Assembly: GCF_902652985.1 (NCBI RefSeq)
Contig: NC_047021.1
Span: forward strand, 35,154,001 to 35,218,000
DNA from: Pecten maximus
Lineage: Eukaryota
Reading direction: 5' to 3'
DNA length: 64,000 nucleotides
The notes beneath the pieces were generated by a model that had not been told where the DNA came from, made no database searches, and worked only from the letters and a program-made list of their open reading frames with translations. Below are positions 10,685 to 62,417 of this stretch, in pieces (the first letter of the stretch is position 1; each line of letters begins with the position of its first letter). A program made the translations under genes and the position numbers.

Positions 10685-12683
10685 TCATTCATATAAAAAG
10701 TTGAGGTCGATACCATATTCCGTGACCTCTTTGTTAAGCATGGCGTCAAACTTTTCGTTTTGCGCAACTGTGAAGCAGTTCTTCCAATCGCCTACACATC
10801 CTGGAAAAAAAAAAGATAATTTGATAAAATACTGTCCATATGTCTGACTGTCGATATTACAAACTTTCTATAATGCTTAAACGTCTATAACATTATACAC
10901 AAAATTGGACAAAAAGGTTTGTTTAATGATAGTTTCAATGTCTACATATATTACCTTTCCTGTAAATAGGTAATCGCCCGCCATTGCCAAAGGAATTCCA
11001 AATCTTAGTTTCTCCTGCCTTGGTTTCATGCTCCTTTTGCAAATTTGCGAATTCAACTGCCGTTTTCACTTCGCATAAAAACGATTCTGGTCGATTTAGC
11101 TGGAGGAATTCTACCAACCTGGTGATGGTGCCGTACAGGTTCTGGAAAATGAGCGTTTACTTTTGGTTTAAATTTATAGTTGTACAATCATCAAATGTGT
11201 CGTTTTTAATAAGATATTCAAGAAAGTTTCTATGTAAACGGTTTAAGACTTCTTAATCGATATATGAAGCATTAGTTACTTAATTACGGCGATGCTATGA
11301 AAATGCTCCTTTATATTTATACAAGAACAGAGGAACATACATGCTTCCGTCGACAAACCTGTTTGATATCTTCATATTTCAGAAAGAGAACGTTTAGTTT
11401 CTGATTCGAGAGTTTGGCTTTCTCCCATTCTCTTACGTACGAAAACCAACTTCCACCAAAGAGTCCAACTATAATAACAAGAAAAATAGCAACGGTTATT
11501 GTTTTGGTGTGTAAAAGATAGTTTTAGATGTAGCTTCAGAACGGAAAATTACATCTTTGGTAAGATAAACGGAAAAATAAAATGTATAGGAAGTATTTTT
11601 TTCATTCTAAATATGTTAAAGAGTATGTGTGAATTAAATAAGTAATGTTTACATAATTTTTCTTTCAAGCTTTGAATCAAACCGTTTCAGTTTATTAATC
11701 ACATTTGGCGTTACACCGAATGACCTTAACTTTAACTTAACAAATAACATAATATAAAATAAAGCTATGGAAGGGTACACACACTCGTCCGATAGACAAA
11801 AGTTGAAAAAGCCATTAAAGTCTCCTTCATATATCGTGCCTACAACTCGCTTATAGTGTTCATAATAAGATACTATGGTGTCCTTTGGATTCCGTAGAAC
11901 ATGTACTATCTTCACTTTGCCCTCTCTTGCCATTGCTGGGATCAGTGGGTAGGTGAGGTGTGTGTGGAGCGTTCGGGGAGAATCAAGCTTGTCAATCTCG
12001 CTTGATGGATGGAATTCGATCATGTAAGGTGTCCCTTGATACTTTAGAGATTCTGTTTGTATCATTTGTATCATGTTATACACCCAGTGTGTTCCTGAAA
12101 CGATACGGCAATGTTACGAATAGTATGGAGGAGCAATGTAGTTTTGTCGCAAAACATAAAAATGTTACGGTGTTCGGTGTATAAAACTATGCTTAACACT
12201 AAACATTTTGTCTATAGAGATAAAAAAAAATCATGTCAACTTGTTAGATATTACTATAGTGCCACATAAGTTTAAAAAAATGACAACTTTATGTTAATAT
12301 CTTAATTTCAATGATAATCAATGAAATCAACGATACTCTTCATGGTGACGTTACAGGGAAAATCATTATCGGATTTTAGGATTTTGTTGACATTAGTTCC
12401 CAAGACACAACATCATAATAAAATAAAATCTTATATCATTATGTATAAATTCACATAAAGTTGGTTATACAAATGTACAGAATACTAGTTGATATAAATC
12501 GCTATATATACCTGATTTAGGAAATGAACATAACAATACATCATCTGGTCTGAGATGTAATGATGACACATCATTCAGTTGGTCTTCTACGTTTCCTGGA
12601 ATGTCGGGATGGAATTTCAATCCTTTGTAAGGTTTGAATCGAAGAGTGTTGCCATGAGAGTCAGTAGAAGTTTGTGGCTTGAT
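10685..12683 (-). pseudogene. Cytosolic sulfotransferase copy L: 5 in-frame coding exons, but start codon is ATC and promoter is replaced
   Basis: Exons 12683-12512, 12094-11783, 11468-11359, 11141-10955, 10800-10685, all GT-AG, total 897 nt (298 aa + stop). Motifs FPKSGTHW, RNPKDTIVSYY, RKGCVGDWKNCFT. The codon that is ATG in the 62106 and 3560 copies is ATC at 12683-12681. Confidence 0.8.
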
Positions 12684-12908
12684 TTTGAACACCTACAAAC
12701 AATATGTAATATATCTGATGACGTAAATGTATTCGCGTGTTCTAGTACAGAAACTGATACAATCCAAACCCCCACCCCTTCTTTTCTGCAATATCTATCT
12801 GTCCCCTTGGCCCTTAAAGTAGACAACACTCTCAAGATGTCCCCGCTGATAAGTTGTACCTTTTCGGTCCCACGAATGGATCAGCCCGGCGATTCTAAAA
12901 TTAGCAAT

Positions 12909-14555
12909 TAGGGAGAGGTAACTTGTTGGTAGGTAGAGGTAACTTGTCAGTAGGTAGATGTAACTTGTCAGTAGGGAGAGGTAACTTGTCAGTAGGGAGA
13001 GGTAACTTGTCAGAAGGTAGAGGTAACTTGTCAGTAGGGAGAGGTAACTTGTCGGTAGGTAGAGGTAACTTGTCAGTAGGTTGAGGTAACTTATCAGTAG
13101 GTAGAGGTAACTTGTCAGTAGGTAGAGGTAACTTACCTCTCCCTACTGACAAGTTACCTCTACCTACTGACAAGTTACATCTACCCACTGACAAGTTACC
13201 TCTACCTAATGACAAGTTACCTCTCCCTCCTACAAGTAACCTCTACCTACTGACAAGTTACCTACTGATAAGTTACCTCTACCTACTGACAAGTTACCTC
13301 TCCCTACTGACATGTTACCTCTCCCTACTGACAAGTTACCTCTACCTACTGATAAGTTACCCCTACCTACTGACAAGTTACCTCTTCCTACTGACAAGTA
13401 ACCTCTACCTACTGACAAGTTACCTCTCTCTTATGACAAGTTACCTCTCCCTACTGTCAAGTCACCTCTACCTACTGACAAGTTACCTCTCCCTACTGAC
13501 AAGTAACCTCTACCTACTGACAAGTAACCTCTACCTACTGACAAGTTACCTCTACTCACTAACAAGTTACCTCTACCTACTGACAAGTTACCTCTCCCTA
13601 CTGACAAGTTACCTCTCTCTTATGACAAGTTACCTCTACCTACTGACAAGTTACCTCTACCTACTGATAAGTTACCTCTACCTACTGACAAGTTACCTCT
13701 ACCTACTGACAAGTAACCTCTCCCTACTGACAAGTTACCTCTACCTACTAACAAGTTACCTCTACCTACTGACAAGTTACATTTACCTACTGACAAGTCA
13801 CCTCTACCTACTGACAAGTTACCTCTCCCTACTGACAAGTTACCTCTACCTAATGACAAGTAACCTCTCCCAAATGACAAGTTACCTATACCTACTGACA
13901 AGTTAAATCTACCTACTAACAAGTTAAATCTACCTACTGACAAGTTAATCTACCTACTGACAAGTTACCTCTACCTACTGACAAGTTAATCTACCTACTG
14001 ACAAGTTACCTCTCCCTACTGACAAGTTACCTCTACCTACTGACAAGTTACCTCTCCCTACTGACAATTTAATCTACCTACTAACAAGTTACCTCTACCT
14101 ACTGACAAGTTACCTCTACCTACTGACAAGTCACCTCTCCCTACTGACAATTTAATCTACCTACTAACAAGTTACCTCTACCTACTGACAAGTTACCTCT
14201 ACCTACTGACAAGTTACCTCTCCCTACTGACAATTTAATCTACCTACTAACAAGTTACCTCTACCTACTGACAAGTTACCTCTACCTACTGACAAGTCAC
14301 CTCTTCCTAATAACAAGTTACCTCTACCTACTAACAAGTTACCTCTACCTACTAACAAGTTACCTCTACCTACTGACAAGTCACCTCTACCTACTGACAA
14401 GTTACCTCTACCTACTGACAAGTTACCTCTACCTACTAATAAGTTACCTCTTCCTACTGACAAGTTACCTCTACCTACTAATAAGTTACCTCTTCCTACT
14501 GACAAGTTACCTCTCCCTACTGACAAGTTACCTCTACCTACTGACAGGTTACTTC
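12909..14555. repeat. 21-bp minisatellite (agttacctct[a/c]cctactgaca)n with internal orientation switch at ~13131
   Basis: Direct reading. 12909-13131 is the reverse complement of the unit repeated in 13132-14555. Confidence 0.97.
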
Positions 14556-15364
14556 TGGTAAACCTTTTGGTTCACTTTACCATTATGGTGAATCATTTCA
14601 TGGCCATGGTAAAGCGAAACATTTCACTATTTTCTTTCTACACTTTTTTCCACCAAATCCTTTTCAAATTACACTATATAATTCCTCTAAACACATTAAC
14701 ACATACAAACATGTCTGGGTGTCAGGTAATTTAAAGTGGCGCGGGGCGATTCACTTTACCATGATCATGGTAAAGTGCAGGCGCGGATCCAGGAATTTGA
14801 AACAGGACCCTCCCCCCCCCCCCCCTCAACCCCCCCCCCCCCCCCCTCCGGGTCCGCTAGTGAAGTGAAGCTTTTCTTTTCGCCAAATCTGTTTTAAATT
14901 AAATTACCTTGTTTTATTCCTCTGAAAAAAGTGAAATGCTTCACTTCACCATGGCCATGGTAAAGTGAAGCGCCCCACCCCACCCTAAATTTCCTGACCC
15001 CAGACATTTTTTTGTGTGTAAATGTGTTCAGAGGAATAAAACAAGGTAATTTAAAAAAGATTTGGCGAAAAAAAGAATTACTCAGAAAAAAATGAAATGC
15101 TTCACTTTACCATGGCCATGGTAAAGTGAAGCGCCCTGCCCCACCCTATTTTTTGTGTGATCAGATGTAGAGAAATAAATAAGCTAATTGATAAAACAAT
15201 TGTGTAAAAAAAAGTCAATTAAAAACAAAATATAAGGTGGCTTCACTTTACCATGGGAGGGTTCATTTCGCCATAATTGTGAAATGAACCGCGGTTCACT
15301 TAACCATTATGGTATTTTGACCCCGGTTCATTTCACCATGCTTCAAAATACCATGCCACACCGG
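14556..15364. mobile_element. Right arm of a putative non-autonomous DNA element carrying the 21-bp array and 162-bp palindromic modules (copy 1)
   Basis: Repeated ttcactttaccatgg motifs, perfect palindrome gcttcactttaccatggccatggtaaagtgaagc (~15099-15132), terminus ...ccatgccacaccgg|ta shared with 24329 and 47520. Confidence 0.55.
14778..14862. mobile_element. Small nested MITE (caggcgcggatcc...gggtccgctagtg)
   Basis: Imperfect 13-bp TIRs. Flanked by aagtg duplication (14773-14777, 14863-14867). Interrupts one ttcactttaccatg palindrome. Confidence 0.6.
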
Positions 15365-15796
15365 TACATTTCATTCCTTACCTCCTCATAGCTGCTCGCC
15401 CTTCTGTTGTAATGTACTTGAGGTTTATTAGCTAGTTGGTCGTATTTGCCTGCATCCATGATGTCTAAATAACTCACTTGTATTCCAGGTGTAAAACTTG
15501 TCTTGAATATGCGAGTTATATCAGAGCTTATGTACTATGGTCACCTTTACACATTCACTAATTGTCAACAAAAAAACTGTCGACAAAAAACATCCACGAA
15601 AACGGGTGTACCTGCTACGCATGGATAATTCTTTTTTTTATATCTACGGTAACCAGCGCGTATCACAATGGGAAAGTAAGGTCATTGAGATCGTTATACA
15701 CCGCGACATACTATATGAGTTATCAGGAAAAAGTATATCTACAGTCGAATCTGTATTAAGTGACCACTCAAGGGAAGTTGAAGAACGGATGGCTAA

Positions 15797-15896
15797 NNNN
15801 NNNNNNNNNNNNNNNNNNNNNNNNNNNNNNNNNNNNNNNNNNNNNNNNNNNNNNNNNNNNNNNNNNNNNNNNNNNNNNNNNNNNNNNNNNNNNNNN
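15797..15896. other. Assembly gap (100 N)
   Basis: Run of N. Confidence 1.
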
Positions 15897-16270
15897 GGGG
15901 GGGTGGGGAAGGACGGTTAAAGGGATTTTTTGGGGGTTGTAATGGGGGGAAATGGAGGGTTTAAATTTGGGGGTATGGGGTAGGTGGGAATGAACTGTGT
16001 GACAGTAAGGTGTGGGGGTAGTGGGAATGGATTGTGTTACAGTAAGGTGTGGGGGTAGTGGGAATGAACTGTGTGACAGTAAGGTGTGGGGGTAGTGGGA
16101 ATGGATTGTTTGACGGTAAGGTGTGGGGGTAGTGGGAATGAACTGTGTGACAGTAAGGTGTGGGGGTAGTGAGAATGGACAGTGTGACAGTAAGGTGTGA
16201 GGGTAGTGGGAATGGACTGTGTGACAGTAAGGTGTGTGGGTAGTGGGAATGAACTGTGTGACAGTAAGAT
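15897..16270. repeat. 37-bp G-rich minisatellite (truncated by gap)
   Basis: gtagtgggaatggactgtgtgacagtaaggtgtgggg units. Low-quality sequence next to the gap. Confidence 0.93.
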
Positions 16271-17634
16271 ATGAGAGTAATGGAAATTAATCATTTCTTT
16301 TTCGATGTCAAACATTCATTATAAAGAAATACATTCAGTCATTGAGATGTCATAGTGATTCTACAAACGAATTATATTATGACTCGTGCACAGTATTGTT
16401 TATGCAACACTAGGCCAGTATCAATAGAAGTATATTAAAAGAGATACGACATTATGTATCTAGTGTGTTATTATACAAGTAGGAATGAACACTAATTATA
16501 CCGATTTGATAAACCTTTGATAAACCGATGAAGTCGTTATAGGAAAGATTGGTAGACGACAAATATCTCATCATCTGATGATCTGACCATTTAAGATACC
16601 GAAAGGAGCCAAAACCCATTTCGATACTTTTAATAAAAAGAATGGCTTTCTTCTCTTTATTTGTGGTTAGTTTTCTACTTATTTTAACCTCGAAGATGGG
16701 ATATCACTAACAAAGAGAGGACAATCATTATATATGTCACTTACTTCAACCTCGGAGATGAGATACAATGTATTACAAAAAAAGAAAGGACATTAATTTT
16801 ATATGTATATGTTACTTACTCCAAATTCGCAGATTAGAGATCACAAATTCAACATAAGTTACTGAAAAGTGAATTAGAGTGCCAATGATACAAAAGTTAT
16901 CTCCCCTTATAATATACATATGCTAGATATAAAGAGCATGGTCATTGGTATTAGATTCAATTGATACTCCCTGTTGTAAATTGTAAACAGCATTGTGCCA
17001 AAATAACTTTAATTAACAGGACAGACAAATCGACGTATTAATTTCGGTGTACCACTTACCATGTTTTTCTGCCTTTTTCTTATGGCAAAAAATGAAAAAA
17101 ATAATAACTAACTTTTAAAATATAAGATACAACAAAATGTCTTGATATGTATCGACCTGGTTTATAGTTTTTAAGTTTTAATTCTTATTATACGCTTCCA
17201 CCAAATGCCATATGTCATTCATAGGAGAATCGGAGATCGATACCGAACACCTTTCCCTGTTTTTCATACATAGTATCACTATATTAGGTCACCTGAGATG
17301 TTGGTGACAATTTGTTCAATGACTGATCGGTCAGATCATCCTCGCTAGAATACGACGTTTGACGAACTTGATAATTTATATTTGGAATGATGCTATTGAC
17401 AATTTTGTAGCAAGTTTTTGTCATGGTTTTTATATTCATAAAATTGCTTCATACATTTTCTTGGAGGCCATTATGCATTTAGTCAGAAAAGATATGAAGT
17501 TCATTATATTAAAACCGAAAGTGCCCGGTGGCCATGTTTATTAACCCAGACACCTTTAGTTTATCTTTACACTGACCGAGTTACTCTAACGTGTACTACT
17601 CAATTTCGTATACTACAATATGGTTTAATAACAA

Positions 17635-18098
17635 CATTTCTACCACAATACCCCGTGTTATTCAACTCCCAGACCATCAGTTAATCATTACAGCTGTGGA
17701 TTAACAATCTGTTTATAACACACGTGGTATAAACTCTGTACGCATTTTGATCGGCTAACACGGTGAACTTTGACCCAAGCTGCAATTGTTATTGACGTCA
17801 TCAATAATCTAATGACGTCACATCACCGGGTCCCGGACGTCACCGGTACACTTTATTTGCATACGCGAAATTATACTTGGCCACGTTTCCCTTTGATTCA
17901 AGCCGATATTATTGTGGTAGAAACAGGTCACACGACTCGTGATTGTTGGATATGGAATTTATTTCACACTCGTAAGTTATTTTTTAAAAGTTGCAAAAAA
18001 CACTCGCTAAAGCTGGTGTCTTTTGTAACTTTTAAAAAATAACTTACTCGTGTGAAATAAATTCCATATCCAACAACCACTCGTTGTGTAACCTCTAT
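17635..18098. mobile_element. Non-autonomous element with long subterminal hairpin (Crypton-N-like architecture), present only in unit 1
   Basis: Near-perfect ~70-bp-arm inverted repeat at 17936-18085. Segment absent at the paralogous site ~40770. Family assignment is from recalled architecture only. Confidence 0.65.
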
Positions 18099-18410
18099 AT
18101 ACATTGCTATATTCAGATGCTTCACAGAACGCAAATATGCTACTAGTGATATGTTTAAATAAGGATTTATCAACAGATAGGGTTATACGATAAACTGTAA
18201 ACATACAACTACAGGATATAAAACGACAAATATTATAGACGTTTAGTGTTTTTAAACATAATTTTTGACCACGCGATTATCTCTTGAAATACATATCGCA
18301 TACGCGTAACGAAGAAGGTGTCCGGACCGGATATATTTCTGGCCTAGTTTGTATATTAGGATCGTATTTCTCGTGACGAGGAGTGATAAGGGGTACAGGA
18401 GGTTTCTGTG

Positions 18411-18512
18411 AAACCCGTGGCTGAACGATTACAGACCTGTGAGTAAACCCGTGGCTGAACGATTACAGACCTGTGAGTAAACCCGTGGCTGAACCAGTAT
18501 AGAACTGTGAGT
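18411..18512 (+). repeat. 34-bp VNTR x3 containing putative 5' splice donor (ct|GTGAGT) upstream of TRIM-a1
   Basis: aaacccgtggctgaacgattacagacctgtgagt x3. Six copies at 41086-41289, single copies at ~29343 and ~52856. Confidence 0.85.
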
Positions 18513-50200: not shown

Positions 50201-50518
50201 ACTTGGAATATTCTTAATTATCTATTATGCGAATTCATTTTTTGCAATATCAACCTGCTACATCATTTACAAATATTTTCATATCAACACATGTTAACCG
50301 TCGTATATGTGTATACTATATCATTTCAAATACCGCTAAGATCATTTTATATGAAATGATTTTATTATGTACAAACATGATAAAAGACGATATATAATAC
50401 AAGGGAAATAACTCATATTGTATTAGAACAAGCATGTATTTCTATTCCATACCTAAGATGTGTGTTGAAGAACCTTTATTTGAAATAAAGGTTTCTTAAA
50501 TCCGACGCCGATGTATAT

Positions 50519-50764
50519 CTATCGAATCATCAATTTGGATTTTTTCAAAAGTGTAGTTATCGACCTCCGATCAGGAAAGTTCCGCCAGATTATTGCCATA
50601 GTATTCAATTCTCCATTGTCTGTAACGTCCGTTCAGATTAGAAGTAAAGCAGTCGTAGTACCACCAACTACCACGACATGACAGAGCACAATTGTCACCT
50701 TGGATATCATTGTCTCTGTCAAATGTGGTGAAAGCATAACCATCATGGATGGACAAGGCATCAT
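50519..50764 (-). pseudogene. Orphan FReD terminal exon, copy 2
   Basis: HDGYAFTTFDRDNDIQGDNCALSCRGSWWYYDCFTSNLNG, then a 5-nt deletion frameshift relative to copy 1. Confidence 0.85.
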
Positions 50765-51638: not shown

Positions 51639-51925
51639 AGGGGATGCCCGCGGTGGCTGAGTGGTTAAGGTGTCCCAACACTTTATCACTAGCCCTCCAC
51701 CTCTGGGTTGCCGGTTCGAAACCTACGTGGGGCAGTTGCCAGGTACTGACCGTAGGACGATGATTTTTCTCCGGGTACTCCGGCTTTCCTCCACCTCCAA
51801 AACCTGGCACTTCCTTAAATTACCCTGGCTGTTAATAGGACGTTAAACACAAACAAATAAACCCGGGTTCGAACCAGGGACCTCTCGATCTGCAGTCGAA
51901 TGATCTACCACCGAGCTATATCCCC
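51639..51925 (-). pseudogene. tRNA-Cys pseudogene interrupted by a SINE (copy 2)
   Basis: Same junctions and D-arm substitutions as 28310-28597. Confidence 0.92.
51650..51860 (+). mobile_element. tRNA-derived SINE inside tRNA-Cys (copy 2)
   Basis: Near-identical to 28321-28532. Confidence 0.88.
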
Positions 51926-54900
51926 TTCATAGCTACCACTAACATGTATGCATTATTATTTATATATTTCTGTGATGCAATATGCTTCAACATATGAAAT
52001 AGTATCAACATATGACTGAAATATTAAATATCGAGTCGAATGTCTAGGATTAAATAGTGTGATTATCTTTGTCAATACACAGATAAGTTAGTTCTTCTCG
52101 ATTTAGATGTGTTAAATATAGGTTGGTTGTTTGACTTATGTGGATCATAGGTTAATTTTTCGATTAATTTGAATGATTTTTATTCATCGGAACAAATCAT
52201 AATAAATGTCTTTATGTGATTACCTAAAAAAAGCTGACGTGATTTGTACTGGTAGTGCACAAATACACACGTCCTGTGTGTGTTTACCTTTGTGTAAACA
52301 TAAAACTTACTACCAACTATCAACACCTAATGGATGATAAACTCACTGTCAATTATCTAATCACATCAGAATCTGCAGAGGAGACACATCACGCTCTATA
52401 AATATATATGACTCTGACTCTGTTACTCCTGTGTAATTTTTTTCACTTACGGCATATCCACTGATATATGCAAATGTCACGCAAAAATACTATTGTACCT
52501 ATAAACAAGTGATGTGTTTAAGTATGGATTTATCAACAGATACACGACAAACTGCATAACAAACAAAACTAAAGGGTATGAAAATAAAAATACACCCATT
52601 CAATATTACTTTCATCTACCTACCACAACTTCAGCGCATTAAACGACAAGTAATATAGACAGGTTGTGGGTTTGGATTTTTTAAATAACTTTTTTGACCA
52701 CACGATTATCTCTCGCGGTATGTAATATTACATTTTCATGAACACAACAAAGAAGCTATCCGGATATATGTCTGGCCTTGTTTGTTTATTAGGATCGTAT
52801 TTCCCGTGACGACACGTGACAAGGAGTACAGAAGGTCCATGTTGATGTTTCTGTGAAACCAGTGGCTGAGCGATTACAGAACTGTGAGTAATTACGTGTA
52901 TATTGACCTTTAACTATTGATGGTATCGGTATCATAATAAACTACAGGCTTTCAGTATACAATGATCGATACTCTGGAGGATATTATCTTTATAACACCA
53001 GGCTGATATCAACCGTATGGAAAACGAATGTTTGACATTTGCAGATTTGAAGAAATCTGAAGAAATATAAAGACGTAAATACATAAACAATGACAATATT
53101 TTGCTTGATAGACAGATGCATCTACATGTAACATTAACACAAATAAAATGAGACTAGCTTATACGTTTCTACTTTCGTTTTATATCAGTTTAACATTGGT
53201 ATCCGATGCACTGTTTATTCACGCACGGTTTAAATGCAGGCTAAGATTGAAAACGTTGGTTATCGAGTCATATTTCAGTCAAATATATAACTATTTCTAA
53301 CTTTCCTCGTGATCAAATCGTTACCCCGAGTTCTCAGAAGTCCTTCCAATTCGAGAATGTTTACTTTCGTTTTCAATATTTTCAATGTATCTAAGGTCGT
53401 CAATTTTGAATATACAATATATTTCAGTGCATATCATCTGGATATTCTAGAGATCAGAAGTTAAAGCAGAAAGATCCTCAATATGTTTCATGAAATTTGG
53501 AAAGTACATTAAATATATAGATATAGATATACATGTGTATTAATCTGGGACTATATAACTTGCATCACACTCTTCATGAAATTGTCTATTAAAATTCACA
53601 ATCTTTAGCAATGTCGCTATATTGATGACGTTCCATTTAAATCGCGGAAATGAAGAAAAATATTAAAACACCTTGAAAACTGTGTACATCTAATTCGATA
53701 AAGACTAGTATGAAAGATAACGTATATACTGACTGTATTACGATTACATTAGATTACATCATTGAAACAAAAACTGTTCAATGACAGTTTTAAAAGTCCA
53801 TATCTTACAGTTAAAATGATTGAATTCATCCGGCAAATTATTATTCAAATGGTCAATCAAAAATAATGTCTTATGAAATTGGTTCAGCAAGGGAAAGGGT
53901 CTTAAAGGGTATAACTAAAATATACAGGGGTTGTGATGATTTAATATTGGGGTACAAATAATCTACATGGGTTAGCAATCAAGGCAAACTAATATATTAT
54001 CCCATGGAAAGTCATGCTGATAAATAATACTTCAATATGATATTTTTCTGCAACTACTCTAACATCTTAGTGATGAATGTATTGGAGAAAATTAAAGATG
54101 GACACTTTTTGTATCCCAATTAAAAACAGGATTGTTTAGTTTGTGAACTGATTTTGTAGCAAACAGGGACACATGTTACATTTATTTTTGTAAGAAAACA
54201 TATTTGAACAAGTTGTAGCAAGTTGGCACGTGATATATAGTTACAAAAATAGTTGTTGCAAATTCACTCTCATCATCCTGTCAAACACATTTCACTTTGT
54301 TACAAAAATTGTTGTAGGAAATTGTGTAATAAACTGGCACGCCTCATCTGTTCGTCTGTGCGCCCTTTGATCCACAGTGCTTTATCGGGACATAACTCAA
54401 CTGATCTCTGCAAAACTTTGTACTCGTGTCAGACCAAAGTCCTAATTGTTCTCCCTGTTATTGGAAGAAAAACGTTTTCATAGTTCGAGGTTACCATGGA
54501 AACAAAAAGTCAAATAAAAAATTGACTGCAAATTTCCCACGGATTTCAGTTTAAACATTCAACTGATTTCTACAAACTGTGGGCTCTAGTTGTGCCATAG
54601 GATATATCTGTTACCATGGAAGGGGTAATGCTATACTGTGAGGCTATTATTTTTCTATTAATGCATTCCTGATAATTAAATAATCACGAAAAGATAATGG
54701 ACAAATAATAAAGTTAACCATGAACAACTATATCATCTGTCATTGTCCATGTATTAACATTATTTGCTTAATCGGACGGCCAAGATGACAAATGTATTTT
54801 CGACGAAAATTTTGTTTACACAATGCCATAATTTAAGTATTTTATACTTAACGAGCACGAACCTTTTGATTTGAAACACGTGTATATGTAGGGTTTTAAT

Positions 54901-54942
54901 TTGGACATCTTGATTCTAGGTAACACAGGCACCATCTTTAAC

Positions 54943-56970
54943 ATGGCGGAAGGATTTGTCCGGGAACAGTCGTCGGTAGATGGCTCCAGAAGTCAATCTC
55001 TGGATACTTTAGTACTGGAATGTCCTATCTGTCTGGAACAGCTGCGACACCCTAAGTCGCTCCCTTGTCTACATTCATTTTGTGAGGAATGCCTTGGTAG
55101 TTTCATCACCAATGAGTCGTCAGGTAAAGCTGCCTCGGCATCCTCATTCTCTTGTCCTGTATGCCGTCAGGTCACCGAGCCGATGAACCCGTCAGAAGAC
55201 AAGGAAAGTTGGGCCGGACAGTTTCCTACCAACAATCTGGCAGTCGAATTGATCCGACATTTACAAAATACGAATACGTTGATAACGTGCAAGCCTTGTG
55301 AGAAGAAAGGGAACACGAATGTACCAGCAAAGTTTTGGTGCCATCAAAACAAATCTTACTTCTGTGCAGCCTGTAAAATCGGCTATCATGACCTGTTTCA
55401 TGAAGAATGCGAACCAGAGAATATCACGGAATGGAACAAATCAGATACGATCCGAAGGCAGACGTCGGCTCATGGATGTGGAAAACATAAAGAGAATATA
55501 GAGTATTACTGTGAAGACCATCTGATTCTTGGATGTAACAAATGTATAATTATCGATCACCGGAAGTGTGAAGTAGTGACATCAGTAGACGATTTCCGGG
55601 ACAAACTGACACCTTCGAAATTCAACGATCTTTTTGAAGAGCTTCGGAAAAGCGCAGACGCAATGGAAACATTGATAAACGATGTCGCAGAACAGCTTCA
55701 GGCCATGACGAACGATCAAGACATCGCGCTACAAAGTTTAACAGACCTACGCAAAAAGATTAACGAACGTTTTGATACAATTCAGAAAGAGCTTACAGAT
55801 AAATTGATGGCATCTTTCAAGGAAGAGAAAGATAATCTTAATATGTCGAAACTGAAATGTGAAAGATTGATGTTATCTATGCAAAATACGCTGACGTCAT
55901 CGAAGGATGCCGCCTTGAAGGACGATTCCGTGGGGACGATCTGTCTTTTCCAGAGAGGACAGGAGGAGTTCGAGTCCTGTAAGGAACGCATAAAGGAGTT
56001 GGAAAAGTCGTCTAGATCCACCAGTCTGAGACACGAGTATGACCCCGACATACTGGCCGTCGACACCAAGACAAGCCTTACCATGGGAAAGATAGTCGTT
56101 CATCAACAACAGAGGAGACTACCATCTACTGCGTTCAGTACTCCATTGTCTGAACGTCTGATGAAGATAACGGGAAACTTAAACATCAAAGTTCCCTCTG
56201 ACAAAAAATACTGTTCTGCATGTGGAGTTGTTCTCCTGTCTGGTGGCCGTATTGTCGTGGGAGACCATGCAAACAACAAAGTGAAGCTGTTTACAGAAAA
56301 CGGGGATTTGCATTGTGAGGTGGGATTGAGTGATTCGCCTTGTGACCTTTGTCGTATTGATGACAATACTGTGGCCGTGATGCTAGTGACAGTTAAAACC
56401 ATCTGTGTTGTCGCTGTTGAGGATTTAACCTTGACCATCTCATCGGAAATCCTTATTCCAAACATCACTGAAGACTGTCTTGGTGTCACATACAACAACA
56501 CTAACTTTGTAGTTGGTACATTATCATCACTTTACAGTGTACCAAAATATGGGGGTCAAGCCACAAAACTTCATACAGTTGAATCAAGATGTCTGCATCT
56601 CGCCAGTAATCAGAACAATGGGTACGTGTTCGCTAGCTTAAATGAAACAACTCCTGACAAGGTGGCCGTGACACGACTGTCTGACAAGTCCATCAGAGAC
56701 GTATTGAAGGTCGGCACTGTGAAAAGAACAACAGGAATAGACGTAGACAGAGAGGGTAACGTGTATGTTTGTGGAGGTAGCTCACCAAACGTCATACAGA
56801 TGTCACAGGATGGAACCAACGTCAGGGAACTGCTGACGTTGTCAGATGGTATCAAACGTCCGAGGGCGATTTCCGTGTATGGTGATAAAGTAGTGATCAC
56901 AAATGAGTATTCAGACCAACGGAATTTTATTCATATGTTTCAGCTCATTGAAATGGCAACACAGAAATAA
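54943..56970 (+). CDS. TRIM-b2: RING - B-box - B-box - coiled coil - NHL-like propeller, single coding exon, 675 aa
   Basis: Open frame with the same motifs, ATG at 54943. A 1-nt difference at the b1 stop extends the C-terminus by EMATQK. Confidence 0.93.
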   Translation: MAEGFVREQSSVDGSRSQSLDTLVLECPICLEQLRHPKSLPCLHSFCEECLGSFITNESSGKAASASSFSCPVCRQVTEPMNPSEDKESWAGQFPTNNLAVELIRHLQNTNTLITCKPCEKKGNTNVPAKFWCHQNKSYFCAACKIGYHDLFHEECEPENITEWNKSDTIRRQTSAHGCGKHKENIEYYCEDHLILGCNKCIIIDHRKCEVVTSVDDFRDKLTPSKFNDLFEELRKSADAMETLINDVAEQLQAMTNDQDIALQSLTDLRKKINERFDTIQKELTDKLMASFKEEKDNLNMSKLKCERLMLSMQNTLTSSKDAALKDDSVGTICLFQRGQEEFESCKERIKELEKSSRSTSLRHEYDPDILAVDTKTSLTMGKIVVHQQQRRLPSTAFSTPLSERLMKITGNLNIKVPSDKKYCSACGVVLLSGGRIVVGDHANNKVKLFTENGDLHCEVGLSDSPCDLCRIDDNTVAVMLVTVKTICVVAVEDLTLTISSEILIPNITEDCLGVTYNNTNFVVGTLSSLYSVPKYGGQATKLHTVESRCLHLASNQNNGYVFASLNETTPDKVAVTRLSDKSIRDVLKVGTVKRTTGIDVDREGNVYVCGGSSPNVIQMSQDGTNVRELLTLSDGIKRPRAISVYGDKVVITNEYSDQRNFIHMFQLIEMATQK

Positions 56971-57505
56971 GGGGATTAAGGAACATTTTGTGGAATCCGA
57001 AAGACAATAGATGAGTTTGTATTATTTAGCTACACCTCATTCATTCAATTTTTTTTTTAAATTCTATACGGAATCTGTGAATATCAGTAATATATCATGC
57101 AATATGAATCCATGAAACATTATATACTATAGAGAATTTTCAATATATTGTAATTTTATTTGATACTTCAAAATAGGTATTTGCGTCCATGAACTGTGGA
57201 TTTAGGTTAGAGCAGCACATACATTCGTATAACAACACAAAGAACAAAGAAACTATAGAAACTATTGTTATTAGTTATATAATGTTATACCGTCATTTCC
57301 CGTGTGTTGCCCGCCCGCACAAGTCAAAATAATGGTTTTATAATTTAAATCTGCAGATAGCCCGTTTCTGTTCATTGTCTTTGAAGTTTTTGCTGCGTAA
57401 TAGAGCACACGTTCTCACAATCAGGGGAATCCCTTGCTGTATGTGTATTGCACTCATATTTGATCAGTGTTGCCTTGAGACGTGTACGTATTACTGAATC
57501 TATAT

Positions 57506-57620
57506 TACCATTCATATTTATATACATAGGTACCATTCATATTTACATACATCGGTACCATTCATATTTACATACATAGGCAATATTCATATTTACATAC
57601 ATTGGTACCATTCATATTTC
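57506..57620. repeat. 25-bp minisatellite, short allele
   Basis: Same unit as 34025-34530. Confidence 0.85.
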
Positions 57621-57879
57621 GCACTTGAAAGCAAGTCGGCACCTACTAGTACACCAGAGAAACATACAAAAAGGTAAATTGGATTTGACAAGTAATGTAT
57701 AGCCCGCAGTGTAATTTTTGGGGGATACATTTTGTCAGATAGTTCGCTTCAACATATAGCCCGCAGAAGGCATTTTTGTGGTTTAGATTGTATAGATCAT
57801 ACACGGGAAATTATGAAAGTCTTAATAGTTATATTCTCAAATAAGTCAAAATCCCCTTTTGAAATTACGTTTTGGCCTG

Positions 57880-58510
57880 TCGTTTTAGCTCTTACGTAAT
57901 ATGGTATGGTGCATGAGGGGTCGTTCGTCCGTCAACTTTTAGTTCTAGAAAAATAAATAAATAAACTGGATATATTGCCAGGGAGTACATGAGGCAGAGA
58001 TCTCTGAAATTAATGACCATGACCTTTTCTTAAGTCAAAGCAGCCAAATAGCGAAAATTTCATTGAGATAGGTATTTCTCAAGTGCTAGAAAACCTAGAT
58101 GACTGATATTTTGCAAGAGGATACAAATTGCAGGGTGCTATTAAGTTTCTTCATATCAATGATATTGATCTATCTTGAAGGTCAATTAATAAAAAATTGC
58201 CATTTGAGAAGTTCTTTAAGATGTGGGATACTCATATTTCGCCACTATGTATCTACTATGATAATTAGTTAGTGCTATTATATGAATATAAATGATATTG
58301 ACCGATTTTCCAGGACAAAGGGGTCAAATATGTTGAAACCGTCAACAATCCTCTATCAAAGTTCCAGAAGACCTAGAGGTCAGATGTTACCTAGTGTCTT
58401 GAAACAAATAACCTTGACCTATTTAAAGGGTAGAGTGTTCAAAATCAAGAATCTTAAGACTAGAAGACCTGATATTTGGCCAGTGCGTACCAGCAATAGG
58501 GTGCTGTAAA
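57880..58510. mobile_element. Degenerate interspersed repeat (Helentron/HINE-like), unit 2 only
   Basis: Starts ttttagctc, has cgtccgtcaactttt and tgacct motifs. No counterpart in unit 1 between ~34600 and ~34885. Confidence 0.35.
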
Positions 58511-60033
58511 TTTTTTTCTCATAATGTCCTTTACTACCAGTATATCCAAAGTCACTTGGGTGTAATATTTAACGGTTCTTTGAGGATCTTTGAAAACTTT
58601 GAAAATTCCTGATATTGAATGCTTTTAGGTTTTCGCGAGTGAATGTCAAAATTGTCAAGGTCCAGTTGGGTAAAATCCTTTATTTTTTTATTTCATTTTA
58701 ACAGCTAGCAATACAATTTTCAGTGATATATGGATTGATATGGGGTGATTTAGATATGTATGAAAAACATCATCGGAGGTAATTTTTTGGTATCGCATGA
58801 ATGCGAAACCACACGTTACAATTAGCTCTTTTAGAAATAGTGTATGACTTTCCTTGACACATTACTAACATAAGGTTGACATAAAATCTCGAGAGAGTAT
58901 TTTCCTATTATTCCGTACTACCCCTGTGAGCGATTGAGGCCTTTTTGGGTCTCTTGTTCTGATATTGTGATTTTTGAATATCCATTTTAATGACAATTAT
59001 CGTGATACATGTATTTATATCTATTCTTCGCACCATATCTGCATATCTATTAATTGTTCGATGTTTTTAGCTTTGTTTCTAAGTATATTAAATGCAACAA
59101 AAAGAAAATTGAATGGTTTCCCGTTAACATATATTCCACGAGTATGACAGAATATCGATGTTTTCACGAGTGCACCATATCTGCTTTGTTTTTGGAGAAA
59201 TGTTTATATTAAGAAATAGCAAATATTGATACTTCAAATGAAGTTGAAACAATCGATACAATTACTGAGAGTGATAAGGCTCATTCTTGTTCCATTCAAC
59301 TTTCCTTGTCCTGATGGTACCCGTTAGCTCCTACTTGCTGTATCAATATCTCACAATAATTTGATATCACGATTTCTTATAACACAGTATATTTGTATAT
59401 GGCCGTGTACTTTTTCAAGTGTCTCCATAAAAATCTATGTATTAATTGTTCATATATTGTCATCGTTTTATCGATTATAAATTAGAATTACGATTTCATT
59501 TACATGCTTGTCTTCTTTGTTATTTATATCTTCTTTCTTTCAAGAGTGAAAAGATAACCACCATTGCTACCTACTAAGAAAAAGTGATTTTTATTTGAAA
59601 AGCTTACAAAACTCAAATGCAATTGATAAAACTCAAATGCAATTGATGAATATTGATGTGTTTGCAATCAAATATCTTTGAATTAACATTTAACAAGAAC
59701 CCTGTCCTTTGAACACTTTAAAACACAATTGACAGTAAAAAATGGTCAACTCATTCCGTACCGTTGTCGACTATAATTGACATAATTTGAAGCTCCCTCT
59801 TTCCCATAGTAATCGACAGGATAGGCTGACGTTATTGTTACCCTTACAACAGAAGAAAGTTTTCAGATGACCCCCAGATATAGATTCCCAGCATTCCAAA
59901 TTTCGAGAGCCACTATGTGATCTAACTATATACTAAGTTTAAGATTGTTCATGGATTCCATCGAAATGGCTTATTCTAATCATGCTTCCTTCTGCATTAC
60001 TCCCTGGAAGAATAGCACATTGTAACAATGTTA

Positions 60034-62106
60034 TCATTCATATAAAAAGTTGAGGTCGATACCATATTCCGTGATCTCTTTGTTAAACATGGCGTCCAAC
60101 CTTTCGTTTTGCGCAACTGTGAAGTAGTTCTTCCAATCGCCTACACATCCTGGAAAAAGATAATTTGATAAAATACTGTCCGTATGTCTGACTGTCGATA
60201 TTACAAACTTTTTATAATGCTTAAACGTCTATAACATTATACACAAAATTGGACAAAAAAGGTTTGTTTAATGATAGTTTCAATGTTTACATATATTACC
60301 TTTCCTGTAAATAGGTAATCGCCCGCCATTGCCAAAGGAATTCCAAATCTTAGTTTCTCCTGCCTTGGTGTCATGCTCCTTTTGCAAATTTGCGAATTCA
60401 ACTGCCCTTTTCACTTCGCATAAAAACGATTCTGGTCGATTCAGCTGGAGGAACTCTACCAATCTAGTGATGGTGCCGTAAAGGTTCTGGAAAATGAGCG
60501 TTTACTTTTGGTGTAAATTTATAGTTGTACAATTATTCAAATGTGTCAATTTTAATAAAATACTCCAGATAGTTTCTATGACTTCTTCATCGATATATTG
60601 AAGCATTAGTTACTTCATAACAGCGATGCTATGAGAATGCTCCTTAACATTTATAAAGAGGAACAGACATGTTTCTGTTGACAAACCTGTTTGATATCTT
60701 CATATTCCAGAAAGAGAACGTTTAGTTTCTGATTCGAGAGTTTGGCCTTCTCCCATTCTCTTACGTACGAAAACCAACTTCCACCAAAGAGTCCAACTAA
60801 AATAACAAGAAAAATCGCAACGGTTATTGCTTTGGTGTGTAAAAGATAGTTTTAGATGTAGTTTCAGAACGGAAAACTACGTCTTTGGTAAGATAAACGG
60901 AAAATTAATTTTAAAGGAAGTAATTTTTAATTCTAAATTGTTAAAGTATGTATGAATTAAATAAGTCAACATAACAAAGAGGAAATACTTTCACTTCTGG
61001 AATCAAAATAAATGATAAACACAAATGTTTACATTATTTTTCTTCCAAGCTTTTAATCAAATTGTTCAGTTTATTTATCACATTTGGCGTTACACCGAAT
61101 GACCTTAACTTAGACTAAACATATAACATAATATGAAATAAAGCTATTGAAGGGTACACACACTCGTCCGATAGACAAAGGTTGAAAAAGCCATTAAAGT
61201 CTCTTCATATATCGTGCCTACAACTCGCTTATAGTGTTCATAATAATATACTATGGTGTCCTTTGGATTCCGTAGAACATGGACTATCTTCACTTTGCCC
61301 TGCCTTGTCATTGCTGGGATCAGTGGGTAGGTAAGGTGTGTGTGGAGCGCTCTGGGAGAATCAAGCTGGTCAATCTCGCTTGATGGATGAAATTCGATCA
61401 TGTAAGGTGTCCCTTGATACTTTAGATATTCTGTTCGTATCATTTGTATCATGTTATATACCCAATGTGTTCCTGAAACGATACGGCAATGTTACAATTA
61501 GTATGGAGGAGCCATGTAGTTTTGTCGCAAAAAAACCCAAAAAAAAACCAACATAATATTAATAAATTGTTTTTTTTAAGGTCTTTCTTTTACGGTGTTC
61601 GGTGTATAAACTATGCTTAACACTAAACATTTTGTCTATAGAGATAAACAAAATCATGTCAACTTGTTAGATATTACTATAGTGCCACATAAGTTTTAAA
61701 AAATGACAACTTTATGTTAATATCTTAATTTCAATGATAATCAATGAAATCAACGATACTCTTCATGGTGACGTTACATGGAAAATCATTACCGGATTTT
61801 AGGATTTTGTTGACGTTAGTTCCCAAGACACAACATAAAAATAAAATGAAATCTTATATCATTATATATAAATTCACATAAAGTTGGTTATACAAATGTA
61901 CAGAATACTAGTTAATATAAATCGCTATATATACCTGATTTAGGAAATGAACATAACAATACATCATCTGGTCTGAGATGTAGTGATGACACATCCTTCA
62001 GTTGGTCTTCTACGTTTCCTGGAATGTCGGGATGGAATTTCAATCCTTTGTAAGGTTTGAATCGAAGAGTGTTGCCATGAGAGTCAGTAGAAGTTTGTGG
62101 CTTCAT
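60034..62106 (-). pseudogene. Cytosolic sulfotransferase copy R: ATG and promoter present, 1-nt frameshift in exon 2
   Basis: Exons 62106-61935, 61472-61162 (311 nt versus 312 in copy L), 60796-60687, 60486-60300, 60149-60034. aaagtctcttcat at ~61203 versus aaagtctccttcat in copy L. Could be a consensus error. Confidence 0.8.
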
Positions 62107-62417
62107 TTTGAACACCTACAAACAATATTTAATATATCTGATGACGTAAATGTATTCGCGTGTTCTAGTACAGAAACTGATACAGTCCGAACCCCCACCC
62201 CTTCTTTTCTGCAATATCTATCTGACCTCTAGGCCCTTAAAGTAGACAACACCCTCAAGATGTCCCCGCTGATAAGTTGTACCTTTTCGGCCCCGCGAAT
62301 GGATCAGCCCGGCGATTCTAAGATTAGCAATACTCCTAACCAGTCCTCTCGTTTAGCGTAATAAGTATTTTGGCTATACGGTGCATGGACTATAAGTTGT
62401 CTGCCTTAAGAATAAGA

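What the first reader, a model, noticed from the sequence alone, without database searches (positions are those of the whole stretch)
10685..62330. A 47-kb TRIM cassette bracketed by a split sulfotransferase gene with complementary lesions
Seen: the SULT gene occurs as a ~2.2-2.3 kb direct repeat (10682-12908, 60031-62331). Similarity stops a few bases past the stop codon on one side and just past the putative 5'UTR exon (ttagcaat) on the other. Using the inverted pseudogene at 3.2-5.6 kb as outgroup, only copy L keeps the ancestral 3' flank (5343ff matches 10105ff) and only copy R keeps the ancestral 5' flank (3320-3410 matches 62350-62450). The locus therefore reads 3'flank-SULT-[TRIM block]-SULT-5'flank, like an integrated cassette. 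Copy L has ATC for ATG and no promoter. Copy R has ATG but a -1 frameshift in exon 2. Inference: a crossover anywhere in the ~0.85 kb between the two lesions would excise ~49.4 kb and rebuild one intact 298-aa SULT. That would give a presence/absence haplotype trading TRIM genes for a functional SULT.
Basis: partly seen in the sequence, partly recalled or inferred. Interest (0 to 1): 0.78.

Follow-up and report, generated by a model that had tools for sequence, protein, structure and literature searches.

The report
Duplicated scallop sulfotransferase flanking a TRIM array
In the king scallop genome two copies of a sulfotransferase gene really do bracket a tandem array of TRIM-like genes, but the idea that both copies are dead with complementary defects is not upheld, so this is an ordinary fast-evolving gene cluster.

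Summary
The genome is Pecten maximus (window = chr C7:35154001-35218000). A 2.2-2.3 kb direct SULT repeat exists (L 10682-12908, R 60031-62331, 91-97% identical). Similarity ends 6 nt past the stop codon and 225 nt before the start codon. L has ATC where R has ATG, and R lacks 1 bp in exon 2. The inverted pseudogene P shares its 3' flank only with L and its 5' flank only with R.

- The block between the copies is a tandem ~23-kb higher-order repeat, and the N gap skips about 14.4 kb of unit register, so the "47/49.4 kb" figures are minima.
- An unplaced scaffold holds two more R-type SULT+TRIM units, one of them an L/R recombinant. The SULT therefore belongs to the array, and the copies do exchange sequence.
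- No contig from 3 DNA samples and 1 RNA sample shows the ATC. ATG occurs in an L-type context. A spliced mRNA contig carries ATG, an open exon 2 and L's 3'UTR.
- RefSeq models L as an intact 327-aa chimera that starts in a relic methyltransferase exon upstream.
- R's frameshift could not be checked.

Verdict: a real segmental duplication in a dynamic bivalve gene array, and an ordinary kind of thing. No empty allele was seen.

The parts
3410..5415 (+). P: inverted SULT pseudogene. It carries both ancestral flank types on one gene body. It has stops, frameshifts and a duplicated exon-4 piece, and it lacks exon 5.
   Evidence: BLAST 77-79% to L and R. tblastn pieces at 3551-3713, 4114-4450, 4809-4911 and 5113-5332 contain stops. 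5343-5415 matches L flank 10103-10031.
10300..10681 (-). L's 3' flank, which serves as the 3'UTR of an expressed SULT mRNA. It is unique in the assembly.
   Evidence: RNA contig X6 record 25 runs from exon 5 through 10300 and beyond, with 13 other letters and 27 gap letters in 10300-10799. The genome search finds only itself and the P match.
10682..12908 (-). Copy L of the SULT gene. Coding exons: 12683-12512, 12094-11783, 11468-11359, 11141-10955, 10800-10688, plus stop 10687-10685.
   Evidence: Alignment to R. RefSeq P0151 matches all exons at 100%. RNA joints lie at 10799/10954, 11141/11359, 11468/11783 and 12093/12511. Pfam Sulfotransfer_1 hits exon 2 at 4.8e-15.
12681..12683 (-). ATC in the assembly at the position of the SULT start codon.
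   Evidence: No contig in 4 runs shows it; all 9 contigs laid there read ATG.
12909..14556 (.). 21-bp minisatellite abutting L's 5' boundary. The first 226 nt (12909-13134) are inverted relative to the rest. The same satellite occurs at 23303-24187 and 45315-46590.
   Evidence: the repeat finder families D1-D10 and inverted pairs I1-I25; BLAST.
14557..15237 (.). Very high-copy repeat inserted in this unit only.
   Evidence: Summed contig depth is 1e5 in bins 14650-14997, and joint 13886/15238 is seen in X1, X3 and X5. It has internal inverted copies.
15238..15788 (-). Relic of a methyltransferase-like gene: upstream region plus first coding exon 15459-15382 (ATG ... GAGGAG|gtaagg). RefSeq uses it as exon 1 of L. 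Unit copies of the exon lie at 24423-24343 and 47615-47535.
   Evidence: tblastn of P0151 residues 1-27. Sequence read. P0154, a methyltransferase-domain protein, shares the exon and the same exon end. 81-83% DNA matches at two C12 loci.
15797..15896 (.). Assembly gap. It is not continuous and skips about 14.4 kb of repeat-unit register.
15977..39115 (.). Higher-order repeat unit A (~23 kb) with two TRIM-like ORFs (20321-22330 and 31455-33494, plus strand) and a 37-bp satellite at 35748-39424.
   Evidence: Self-BLAST 89-97% to unit B; ORFs; Pfam RING above cut-off.
39115..59315 (.). Higher-order repeat unit B with TRIM-like ORFs 43398-44732 (N-terminally truncated) and 54901-56970.
59316..60030 (.). 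R's 3' flank. It is unique within the window but recurs next to both SULT copies on scaffold C3683.
60031..62331 (-). Copy R of the SULT gene. ATG at 62106-62104; 1-bp deletion in exon 2 just after 61204.
62332..63095 (-). R's 5' flank, collinear with P's 5' flank. It contains a 29-bp minisatellite at 62418-62735 and dispersed repeats.

Best explanation
This is a stretch of a fast-evolving scallop gene cluster. One cytosolic sulfotransferase gene once had flanks F5 and F3, an arrangement still visible in the neighbouring pseudogene P. Its body, from -225 to stop+6, was duplicated, and a tandem array of TRIM-like genes now lies between the two copies. The array grows and shrinks by unequal exchange between its own repeats.

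The SULT is itself part of that repeating system. Further R-type SULT+TRIM units exist, and one of them is an L/R recombinant. The two terminal copies therefore each keep just one ancestral flank, as the ends of any tandem array do.

The 'complementary lesions' are features of one assembled haplotype at most, and possibly assembly errors. SULT sequences with ATG in an L-type context exist in other samples. An mRNA with ATG, an open frame and L's 3'UTR is expressed. In the reference, L lies downstream of a relic methyltransferase promoter and first exon that can supply an in-frame start.

Shown: the repeat, the flanks, the array structure, the mosaic copy, and the spliced mRNA contig.
Inferred: the order of events, the exchange mechanism (crossover or gene conversion), and use of the captured exon.
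For: - Repeat and boundaries.
- P carries both flank types.
- The block is a ~23-kb higher-order tandem repeat with four TRIM-like ORFs on the opposite strand.
- Scaffold C3683 (17,667 bp) holds two R-type SULT copies 12.76 kb apart, each followed by R's 3' flank and a TRIM ORF (94-96% to window 54891-61956).
- Cb mosaic: it shares 9 of 15 L-derived sites in its 5' part against 1 of 33 in its 3' part, p = 2.6e-5.
- L-R identity varies from 90.6% to 96.8% by segment.
- L vs R dN/dS is 0.33 (18 non-synonymous, 14 synonymous changes in 292 codons), with intact splice sites.
- RNA contig with 4 GT..AG introns, ATG, 0 gaps in exon 2, exons 3-4 identical to L, and a 3'UTR in L's flank.
- ATG in all 9 contigs at 12681 across 4 runs, with L-specific neighbours in X1 and X5.
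- RefSeq chimeric model and the relic methyltransferase exon.
- The assembly method (wtdbg2 on CLR reads, only homozygous short-read edits, 1.71% heterozygosity) makes single-base lesions in paralogs unreliable: PMC7191990, passages seen.
- Scallop Sult expansion (83 genes in C. farreri): PMC5700196, passages seen.
Against: - All reads data were Logan contigs, which drop minority variants and can thread through paralogs. They cannot show that the ATC is absent, and the RNA contig could be a chimera of two paralogous transcripts. Its exons 1-2 differ from L at 12 of 184 and 15 of 311 letters, while exons 3-4 differ at 0 of 298.
- No RNA joint from 15382 to 12692 was among the 15 joints shown (29 were hidden), so the chimeric L transcript is unproven. 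Gnomon may have extended the model ab initio.
- L's 5' junction (12908/12909) was not shown to be bridged in any independent sample.
- L's 3' junction is bridged in DNA contigs by only 30 nt (X1, X5), one short of the tool's 31-nt rule.
- X3 has depth 0 at 10474-10647.
- C3683 is unplaced. It could be another haplotype or a piece hidden in the gap.
- The order of events (duplication first or array first) is not resolved.
Confidence: 0.62

Rival explanations
1. A SULT-bearing TRIM cassette integrated into a single SULT gene by one homologous crossover (Campbell-like). Both resulting copies are now dead with complementary lesions, and an L x R crossover between the lesions would excise the block and rebuild one working 298-aa gene. 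That would give a presence/absence polymorphism.
For: - The flank pattern is exactly as predicted.
- Each copy has exactly one lesion in the assembly, with no stops and intact splice sites.
- L/R exchange has occurred.
- R's 3' junction recurs in array-internal SULT copies that could donate a circle.
- Gene presence/absence variation is widespread in a bivalve (PMC7653742, passages seen).
Against: - The ATC was seen in 0 of 9 contigs from 4 runs, and ATG occurs in an L-type context.
- An open, spliced mRNA with L's 3'UTR exists without any need for a rebuild.
- RefSeq reads L as open through an upstream exon.
- The frameshift is unverified and is a G-run indel of the kind CLR assemblies make (for the method).
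- The longest identical L/R runs between the lesions are only 107 and 68 nt.
- The flank pattern is equally produced by tandem duplication with an array at the junction.
- No empty allele or circle was observed.
Confidence: 0.12
2. Assembly artefact. L and R are one gene or two alleles that were wrongly placed on either side of a collapsed or mis-scaffolded repeat, so the bracket does not exist on any real chromosome.
For: - A scaffolding gap lies between the copies and breaks the unit register by 14.4 kb.
- The assembler is wtdbg2 with Scaff10X and Hi-C on a genome with 1.71% heterozygosity.
- An unplaced scaffold holds related units.
Against: - L and R differ by 3-9% plus 47- and 57-bp indels, far above allelic divergence.
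- L-type sequence identical to the window is present in an independent sample exactly where L and R are 90.6% alike: X3 records 10 and 12, with 0 other letters over 185 and 237 nt.
- Each junction with array DNA lies inside a contig, not at the gap (L with the satellite and methyltransferase relic before the gap; R with its TRIM unit after it).
- R's junction is replicated twice on C3683.
- L's junction with F3 is carried by an RNA contig from another study.
Confidence: 0.1
3. L is a working chimeric gene. It is transcribed from the captured methyltransferase promoter and first exon, spliced across the 2.7-kb satellite intron into the old acceptor 9 nt before the former start codon. It yields a 327-aa SULT with 29 extra N-terminal residues, so loss of the old ATG is harmless. 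This overlaps with the best explanation.
For: - The RefSeq model matches L at 100% in every exon.
- The exon has an ATG, a consensus donor GAGGAG|gtaagg, and a phase-0 join to ttgtttgtag|GTG.
- The same exon with the same end is exon 1 of a methyltransferase-domain protein.
- About 330 bp of upstream DNA is co-duplicated.
- The RNA contig ends 2 nt upstream of that acceptor (at 12694; exon starts 12692), and RNA depth is 0 in 12736-12909, as expected if an intron ends there.
Against: - No joint 15382/12692 appeared among the joints shown for the RNA run.
- The RNA contigs over the start codon read ATG, not L's ATC.
- Gnomon can extend models ab initio to find a start.
- The same relic exon in units A and B has no SULT downstream.
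Confidence: 0.3

Closest known systems
Tandem segmental duplications as substrates of non-allelic homologous recombination and gene conversion (general principle, recalled)
   Same: Direct repeats of 2.2 kb at 91-97% identity flank a block of more than 47 kb. A third copy shows a switch of ancestry between L-type and R-type.
   Different: No deletion or duplication allele has been mapped. The identical runs are short (no more than 107 nt). The block is itself a tandem array with an unresolved gap.
Expanded cytosolic sulfotransferase (Sult) family of scallops (Li et al. 2017, PMC5700196; passages seen)
   Same: The gene is a Sulfotransfer_1 protein of a scallop. It sits in a local cluster of SULT copies and fragments. 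The nearest full-length relatives are scallop 'sulfotransferase 1C3-like' proteins.
   Different: That paper concerns Chlamys farreri and toxin-induced kidney expression. Membership of this gene in the toxin-responsive clade was not tested, and the clade lists are in supplements I could not see.
Gene presence/absence variation and hemizygous regions in bivalves (Gerdol et al. 2020, PMC7653742; abstract and passages seen)
   Same: These are young, recently expanded gene families in structurally variable DNA. Copy content differs between samples: a variant exon-2 type is present in X3 and X6 but not in X1 or X5 contigs.
   Different: That work is on a mussel. No absence allele has been shown at this scallop locus.
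Chimeric genes formed by capture of a promoter and first exon from a duplicated gene fragment (general principle, recalled)
   Same: A relic first exon of a methyltransferase-like gene with a consensus donor lies 2.7 kb upstream of L and reads in frame into it.
   Different: Transcript support for the junction was not seen here.

Membership tests
Cytosolic sulfotransferase (Pfam Sulfotransfer_1, PF00685) | Domain match above Pfam's gathering score | tested here: met
   Exon 2 of L alone scores 56.1 bits against a cut-off of 22, E 4.8e-15. PDB hits are to SULT4A1, SULT1E1, SULT1C2 and others, down to E 1e-10. Exon 1 alone gave no family. Exons 3-5 were not searched against Pfam.
Cytosolic sulfotransferase (Pfam Sulfotransfer_1, PF00685) | PAPS-binding motifs and catalytic His. 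The motifs are recalled from knowledge of the family: PKSGTxW loop, His in xTHL, RNxKD..SYY, RKGxxGDWKxxFT. | tested here: met
   Read directly in the translations of L. FPKSG|THW spans exons 1/2; LHTHLTYP and LRNPKDTIVSYY lie in exon 2; YRKG|CVGDWKNCFT spans exons 4/5. The motif definitions come from memory, not from a call.
Cytosolic sulfotransferase (Pfam Sulfotransfer_1, PF00685) | Enzymatic sulfotransfer activity | not testable with these tools
   Needs expression and assay.
TRIM (RING - B-box - coiled coil, with C-terminal propeller) | N-terminal RING finger | tested here: met
   zf-RING_UBOX scores 38.8 and 41 bits (cut-off 25.2) and zf-C3HC4 scores 33.4 and 32.9 (cut-off 21) in the 2 of 4 ORFs tested.
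TRIM (RING - B-box - coiled coil, with C-terminal propeller) | B-box zinc finger | tested here: inconclusive
   zf-B_box scores 23.2 and 17.0 bits against a cut-off of 24.1.
TRIM (RING - B-box - coiled coil, with C-terminal propeller) | Coiled coil and C-terminal NHL-like beta-propeller | tested here: inconclusive
   Only a weak SBBP beta-propeller repeat hit at 17.5 bits against a cut-off of 20.5. The coiled coil was not tested and no structure was predicted.
NAHR-prone direct segmental duplication | Direct repeats of kb size and at least 90% identity flanking unique or array DNA | tested here: met
   2227 and 2301 nt, 90.6-96.8% by segment, same orientation.
NAHR-prone direct segmental duplication | Evidence of exchange between the repeats | tested here: met
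   Cb shares 9 of 15 L-derived sites in the 5' part against 1 of 33 in the 3' part, p = 2.6e-5. Private substitutions also switch: L 13 / R 20 in the 5' part, L 54 / R 16 in the 3' part. Crossover and gene conversion are not distinguished.
NAHR-prone direct segmental duplication | Observed deletion (single-copy) allele | not testable with these tools
   A recombinant leaves no novel junction for short contigs to show.
Campbell-type integrated cassette | Duplicated homology bracketing the insert, each copy with one original flank | tested here: met
   The feature is not specific, because a tandem duplication with an array at its junction gives the same picture.
Campbell-type integrated cassette | A circular or array-internal donor carrying both junction types (array|SULT -225 and SULT stop+6|array) | tested here: inconclusive
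   The stop+6|array junction recurs twice on C3683. The array|-225 junction is seen once only, at L. Cb is cut inside exon 1 by a retroelement, and Ca runs off the scaffold.
Chimeric gene by promoter/first-exon capture | Upstream exon homologous to exon 1 of an unrelated gene, with usable splice signals and frame | tested here: met
   P0154 is 81% identical over the N-terminal query with the same exon end. The donor, acceptor and phase were read. DNA homologues lie on C12.
Chimeric gene by promoter/first-exon capture | Transcripts spanning the new junction | tested here: inconclusive
   It is not among the 15 joints listed for run X6, and 29 joints were not shown. RefSeq's evidence for the model is not visible here.

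The most novel reading that the evidence does not exclude
The SULT repeats act as a recombination toggle. Unequal exchange between L-type and R-type copies repeatedly makes haplotypes with one, two, three or more SULTs and correspondingly zero, one or more TRIM blocks, so scallop populations would carry a copy-number series. In it, detoxification-type SULT dosage and integrity trade against TRIM-like (putatively immune) gene content. The divergent expressed exon-1/2 type seen in X3 and X6 could belong to a collapsed single-SULT haplotype.
Probability: 0.12. Interest if true: 0.55.

Novelty: new member of a known kind. Interest (0 to 1): 0.3.

Why it matters
If the locus is as read here, it is a worked example of how bivalve gene clusters are remodelled. 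A gene body is duplicated around a growing TRIM array, paralogs exchange sequence, retroelements truncate copies, and a relic promoter and first exon may be recruited to drive a displaced gene.

It also carries a practical warning. In this CLR-based assembly, single-base 'lesions' in near-identical paralogs should not be read as pseudogenisation without reads. It does not open a new kind of biology. Its value would rise only if population data showed a SULT/TRIM copy-number series with functional consequences.

Tried and rejected
1. The repeat finder on the whole window was swamped by minisatellites, so I replaced it with BLAST self-comparison.

2. I first took the 'MDAGKY' upstream exon for the first exon of the TRIM genes. 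I rejected this because the TRIM ORFs lie on the plus strand and the exon matches a methyltransferase-like gene.

3. The RNA loose end at 12709 looked like a possible alternative 5' exon. It is a dispersed repeat with 8 genomic matches, so it is uninformative.

4. Its exon 1 differs from L at 12 of 184 letters where R differs at 3. In exon 2 it shares only 1 (11990) of the 7 listed X6 differences with R and is L-like at 11924. It is a third sequence type, also present in X3 DNA.

5. I searched for in-frame R-type exon-2 ORFs in the protein collection, using R's piece before the deletion. There were no candidates in the allowed length range, and a blank says nothing.

6. I considered whether C3683 fills the gap. 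Its ends do not match the gap edges, so this is undecided.

7. A paper listed for 'TRIM' in bivalves (PMC8382680) only contained the word 'trimmed', so it is not used. Statements on TRIM expansions in molluscs are therefore recalled, not cited.

8. The search of earlier findings gave 4 notes, none bearing on this finding.

9. Supplements were closed, and the Sult clade lists of PMC5700196 are in them.

10. No structure prediction, Rfam search or atlas search was needed.

Full report
**Identity of the sequence.** Exon 2 of the left SULT copy (window:11784-12092, minus strand) matches Pfam Sulfotransfer_1 at E 4.8e-15, 56.1 bits against a cut-off of 22. It also matches solved cytosolic sulfotransferases down to E 1e-10. 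A search of 1.84 billion representatives gave 1300 hits at E<=0.001. The closest named ones are Pecten maximus RefSeq proteins. The genome search places the window at G000:C7:35154001-35218000 in an assembly of 918,306,378 bases in 3,983 contigs. These are the figures of the published P. maximus assembly (PMC7191990, passages seen).

- BLAST and a global alignment show a direct repeat, L 10682-12908 and R 60031-62331. Identity by segment is 96.5, 95.1, 94.1, 90.6 and 96.8%.
- The gene lies on the minus strand with five coding exons of 894 nt in all, i.e. 298 codons. Every splice site is GT..AG in both copies, and neither has an in-frame stop.
- L reads ATC at 12683-12681 where R reads ATG at 62106-62104. 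R lacks one G opposite L 11825.
- Similarity stops 6 nt after the stop codon and 225 nt before the start codon.
- The inverted paralog P (3410-5415) is a pseudogene with stops and frameshifts and no exon 5.
  - Directly after its exon 4, P 5343-5415 matches L's flank 10103-10031 at 81%. Apart from itself, this is the only place in the whole assembly that L's flank matches.
  - P's upstream region 3460-3090 is collinear with R's upstream region 62263-63095. Parts of the latter are dispersed repeats with many genomic copies.

**The gap.** The 100 N at 15797-15896 do not join continuous sequence. Before the gap, 15238-15788 matches 24202-24750 (96.9%) and 15129-15788 matches 47284-47941 (94.1%). 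After it, 15977-17634 matches 39115-40770 (95.4%). In unit A those two points are 14,365 bp apart. The right edge lies in a 37-bp satellite. The true distance between L and R is therefore unknown and at least about 49 kb.

**What lies between the copies.**
- The block is a tandem higher-order repeat of about 23 kb. 15977-39115 and 39115-59315 are 89-97% alike. Each holds two older sub-units that are about 82% alike.
- There are four single-exon ORFs on the plus strand: 669, 679, 444 (N-terminally truncated) and 689 aa. Of the 2 tested, both have RING domains above Pfam cut-offs, a B-box just below cut-off and a weak propeller hit. I call them TRIM-like.
- L's upstream side consists of:
  - a 21-bp minisatellite at 12909-14556, whose first 226 nt are inverted;
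  - a very high-copy repeat at 14557-15237;
  - a segment at 15238-15788 that recurs in units A and B.

**More SULT copies.** The unplaced scaffold C3683 (17,667 bp) carries two further R-type copies in direct orientation, 12.76 kb apart. Each is followed by R's 3' flank and a TRIM ORF (94-96% to window 54891-61956).
- Copy Cb is cut inside exon 1 by a 4.6-kb element with reverse-transcriptase-like and tyrosine-recombinase-like ORFs. It also has two in-frame stops.
- With P as outgroup, Cb shares 9 of 15 L-derived substitutions between 12533 and 11783 but 1 of 33 between 11782 and 10682 (Fisher p = 2.6e-5). For R-derived sites the shift is not significant (4 of 14 against 11 of 23, p = 0.31).
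- Sequence has therefore passed between L-type and R-type copies, by crossover or by gene conversion.
- An interior copy with an L-like 5' part, an R-like 3' part and R's downstream flank is what the duplication product of an L x R unequal exchange would look like. The signal is not clean enough to insist on that.

**The lesions.** The single read-laying run covered window 10300-15500 at 90% likeness. It used three DNA runs (X1, perhaps the assembly's own sample, plus X3 and X5 from other samples and studies) and one RNA run (X6). All were Logan contigs.
- At 12681 every contig reads the ATG letter: X1 1 of 1, X3 5 of 5, X5 1 of 1, X6 2 of 2.
- X1 record 7 (12444-12714) differs from L only at 12491 and 12681. 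X5 record 22 (12538-12714) differs at one place. Both keep L's letters at 12706, 12573 and 12560, where R differs. An L-type context with ATG therefore exists in two samples, and no assembled copy has that combination.
- Contigs drop minority variants, so the ATC may still be real on one haplotype. It is not a fixed feature.
- No deletion near 11825 appeared among the 12 indel rows shown (22 were hidden), so R's frameshift is untested. It is the loss of one G from a GG pair, in an assembly made from CLR reads with wtdbg2 and polished only with homozygous short-read edits. A protein search for in-frame R-type sequences found no candidates, which proves nothing.

**Expression.** RNA contig X6 record 25 (1,634 nt) lies on 12694-12511, 12093-11783, 11468-11359, 11141-10954 and 10799-10300, and runs on past 10300. 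It has four CT..AC joints (GT..AG on the gene strand) at the predicted exon borders.
- It has ATG and no gap in exon 2.
- It has 0 differences from L in exons 3 and 4, where L and R differ at 2 and 7 places.
- It continues at least 380 nt into L's 3' flank.
- Its exons 1 and 2 differ from L at 12 and 15 letters and do not match R or Cb. The same variant letters occur in X3 DNA but not in X1 or X5 contigs.
- It is either a mosaic allele of the L-position gene in other animals or a chimeric contig.
- Either way, an open SULT message ending in L's 3'UTR is made, so L's flank holds the working 3' end.

**A possible chimeric L.** RefSeq XP_033745673.1 (P0151, 327 aa) equals L in all exons at 100% and adds 26 residues encoded at 15459-15382.
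- That exon has an ATG and the donor GAGGAG|gtaagg. It joins in phase to ttgtttgtag|GTG, 9 nt before the old start codon.
- It is not a TRIM exon. It matches exon 1, with the same exon end, of a P. maximus protein with methyltransferase domains (P0154).
- About 430 bp including its upstream DNA has 81-83% matches at two loci on C12.
- The array units thus carry a relic promoter and first exon, and L sits behind one.
- The RNA contig ends 2 nt upstream of that acceptor (at 12694; the exon starts at 12692), and RNA depth is 0 in 12736-12909. However, no joint from 15382 to 12692 was listed, so the chimera is a prediction, not a finding.

**Constraint.** L against R gives 14 synonymous and 18 non-synonymous differences in 292 codons (3 skipped): dS 0.080, dN 0.027, ratio 0.33. 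At least one lineage stayed under purifying selection for most of the time since the split. R against Cb gives 1.31, as expected for a dead copy.

**Mechanism.** I favour the following sequence of events. The SULT body was duplicated with array DNA at the junction. The array was then remodelled by unequal exchange among TRIM units and among SULT copies. The inverted start of the satellite at L's edge hints at a replication-based or fold-back event, but that is inference only. A Campbell-like integration of a SULT-TRIM circle gives the same flank pattern and cannot be excluded; I rate it lower because nothing specific supports it. A pure assembly artefact is unlikely for four reasons:
- The copies differ by 3-9% and by indels.
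- L-type sequence is present unchanged in an independent sample (X3 records 10 and 12).
- Each junction with array DNA lies within a contig.
- R's junction is seen three times.

**Comparison with what is known.** Scallop Sult genes are a known expanded family, with 83 genes in C. farreri (PMC5700196, passages seen). Bivalve genomes are known for hemizygous regions and gene presence/absence variation in young families (PMC7653742, passages seen). Direct repeats as recombination substrates and chimeric genes by exon capture are textbook processes (recalled). My searches for this locus in print listed nothing about it. Those were four keyword searches of an open-access library, not proof of absence.

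**Verdict.** This is a new member of a known kind, and I rate interest at 0.3.

Noticed in passing
window 2078-2263 (minus) and below the window start (G000:C7:35152203-35153304): There is another SULT gene (S0) with an open exon 1 (about 64% aa identity to L), head-to-head with pseudogene P. Weaker exon-1-like hits lie 10 kb and 82 kb beyond the window end (L006, L007). The region is a wider SULT cluster.
   Followed up: partly
L013/L014 = G000:C3683:8271-12853: A 4.6-kb insert has no match in the window and carries ORFs resembling a reverse transcriptase and a tyrosine recombinase (a DIRS/Ngaro-like retroelement by eye; not run against Pfam). It abuts the SULT copy that is truncated inside exon 1.
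   Followed up: partly
window 14650-14997: Summed contig depth is about 1.5-2.9 x 10^5 in all three DNA runs, with poly-C loose ends at 14808 and 14846. This is an extremely abundant short repeat with internal inverted copies.
   Followed up: no
window 12909-13134 versus 13135-14556: The 21-bp minisatellite switches orientation at about 13134, right next to L's 5' breakpoint. It may be a footprint of the rearrangement that placed L there.
   Followed up: no
window 11783-12694 as seen in runs X3 (DNA) and X6 (RNA): A third SULT exon-1/2 sequence type (for example at places 11837, 11867, 11992, 12001, 12003 and 12015) is present in X3 and X6 contigs but absent from X1 and X5 contigs and from the assembly. 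It is a polymorphic or unassembled copy, and it is the expressed one in X6.
   Followed up: partly
window 12709-12714: DNA contigs of X1 and X5 end at 12714, and one RNA contig of X6 leaves the window sequence at 12709 into a dispersed repeat (8 genomic matches). Some SULT copy may have a transposable element about 30 nt upstream of its start codon.
   Followed up: partly
window 43398-44732: The third TRIM-like ORF is N-terminally truncated (444 aa against 669-689 aa), so only three of the four TRIM-like genes in the block look complete.
   Followed up: no
window 35748-39424 and 15904-16388: A 3.7-kb array of a 37-bp satellite occupies, in unit A, the position where unit B has R's 3' flank and R. 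The assembly gap's right edge starts in the same satellite.
   Followed up: partly
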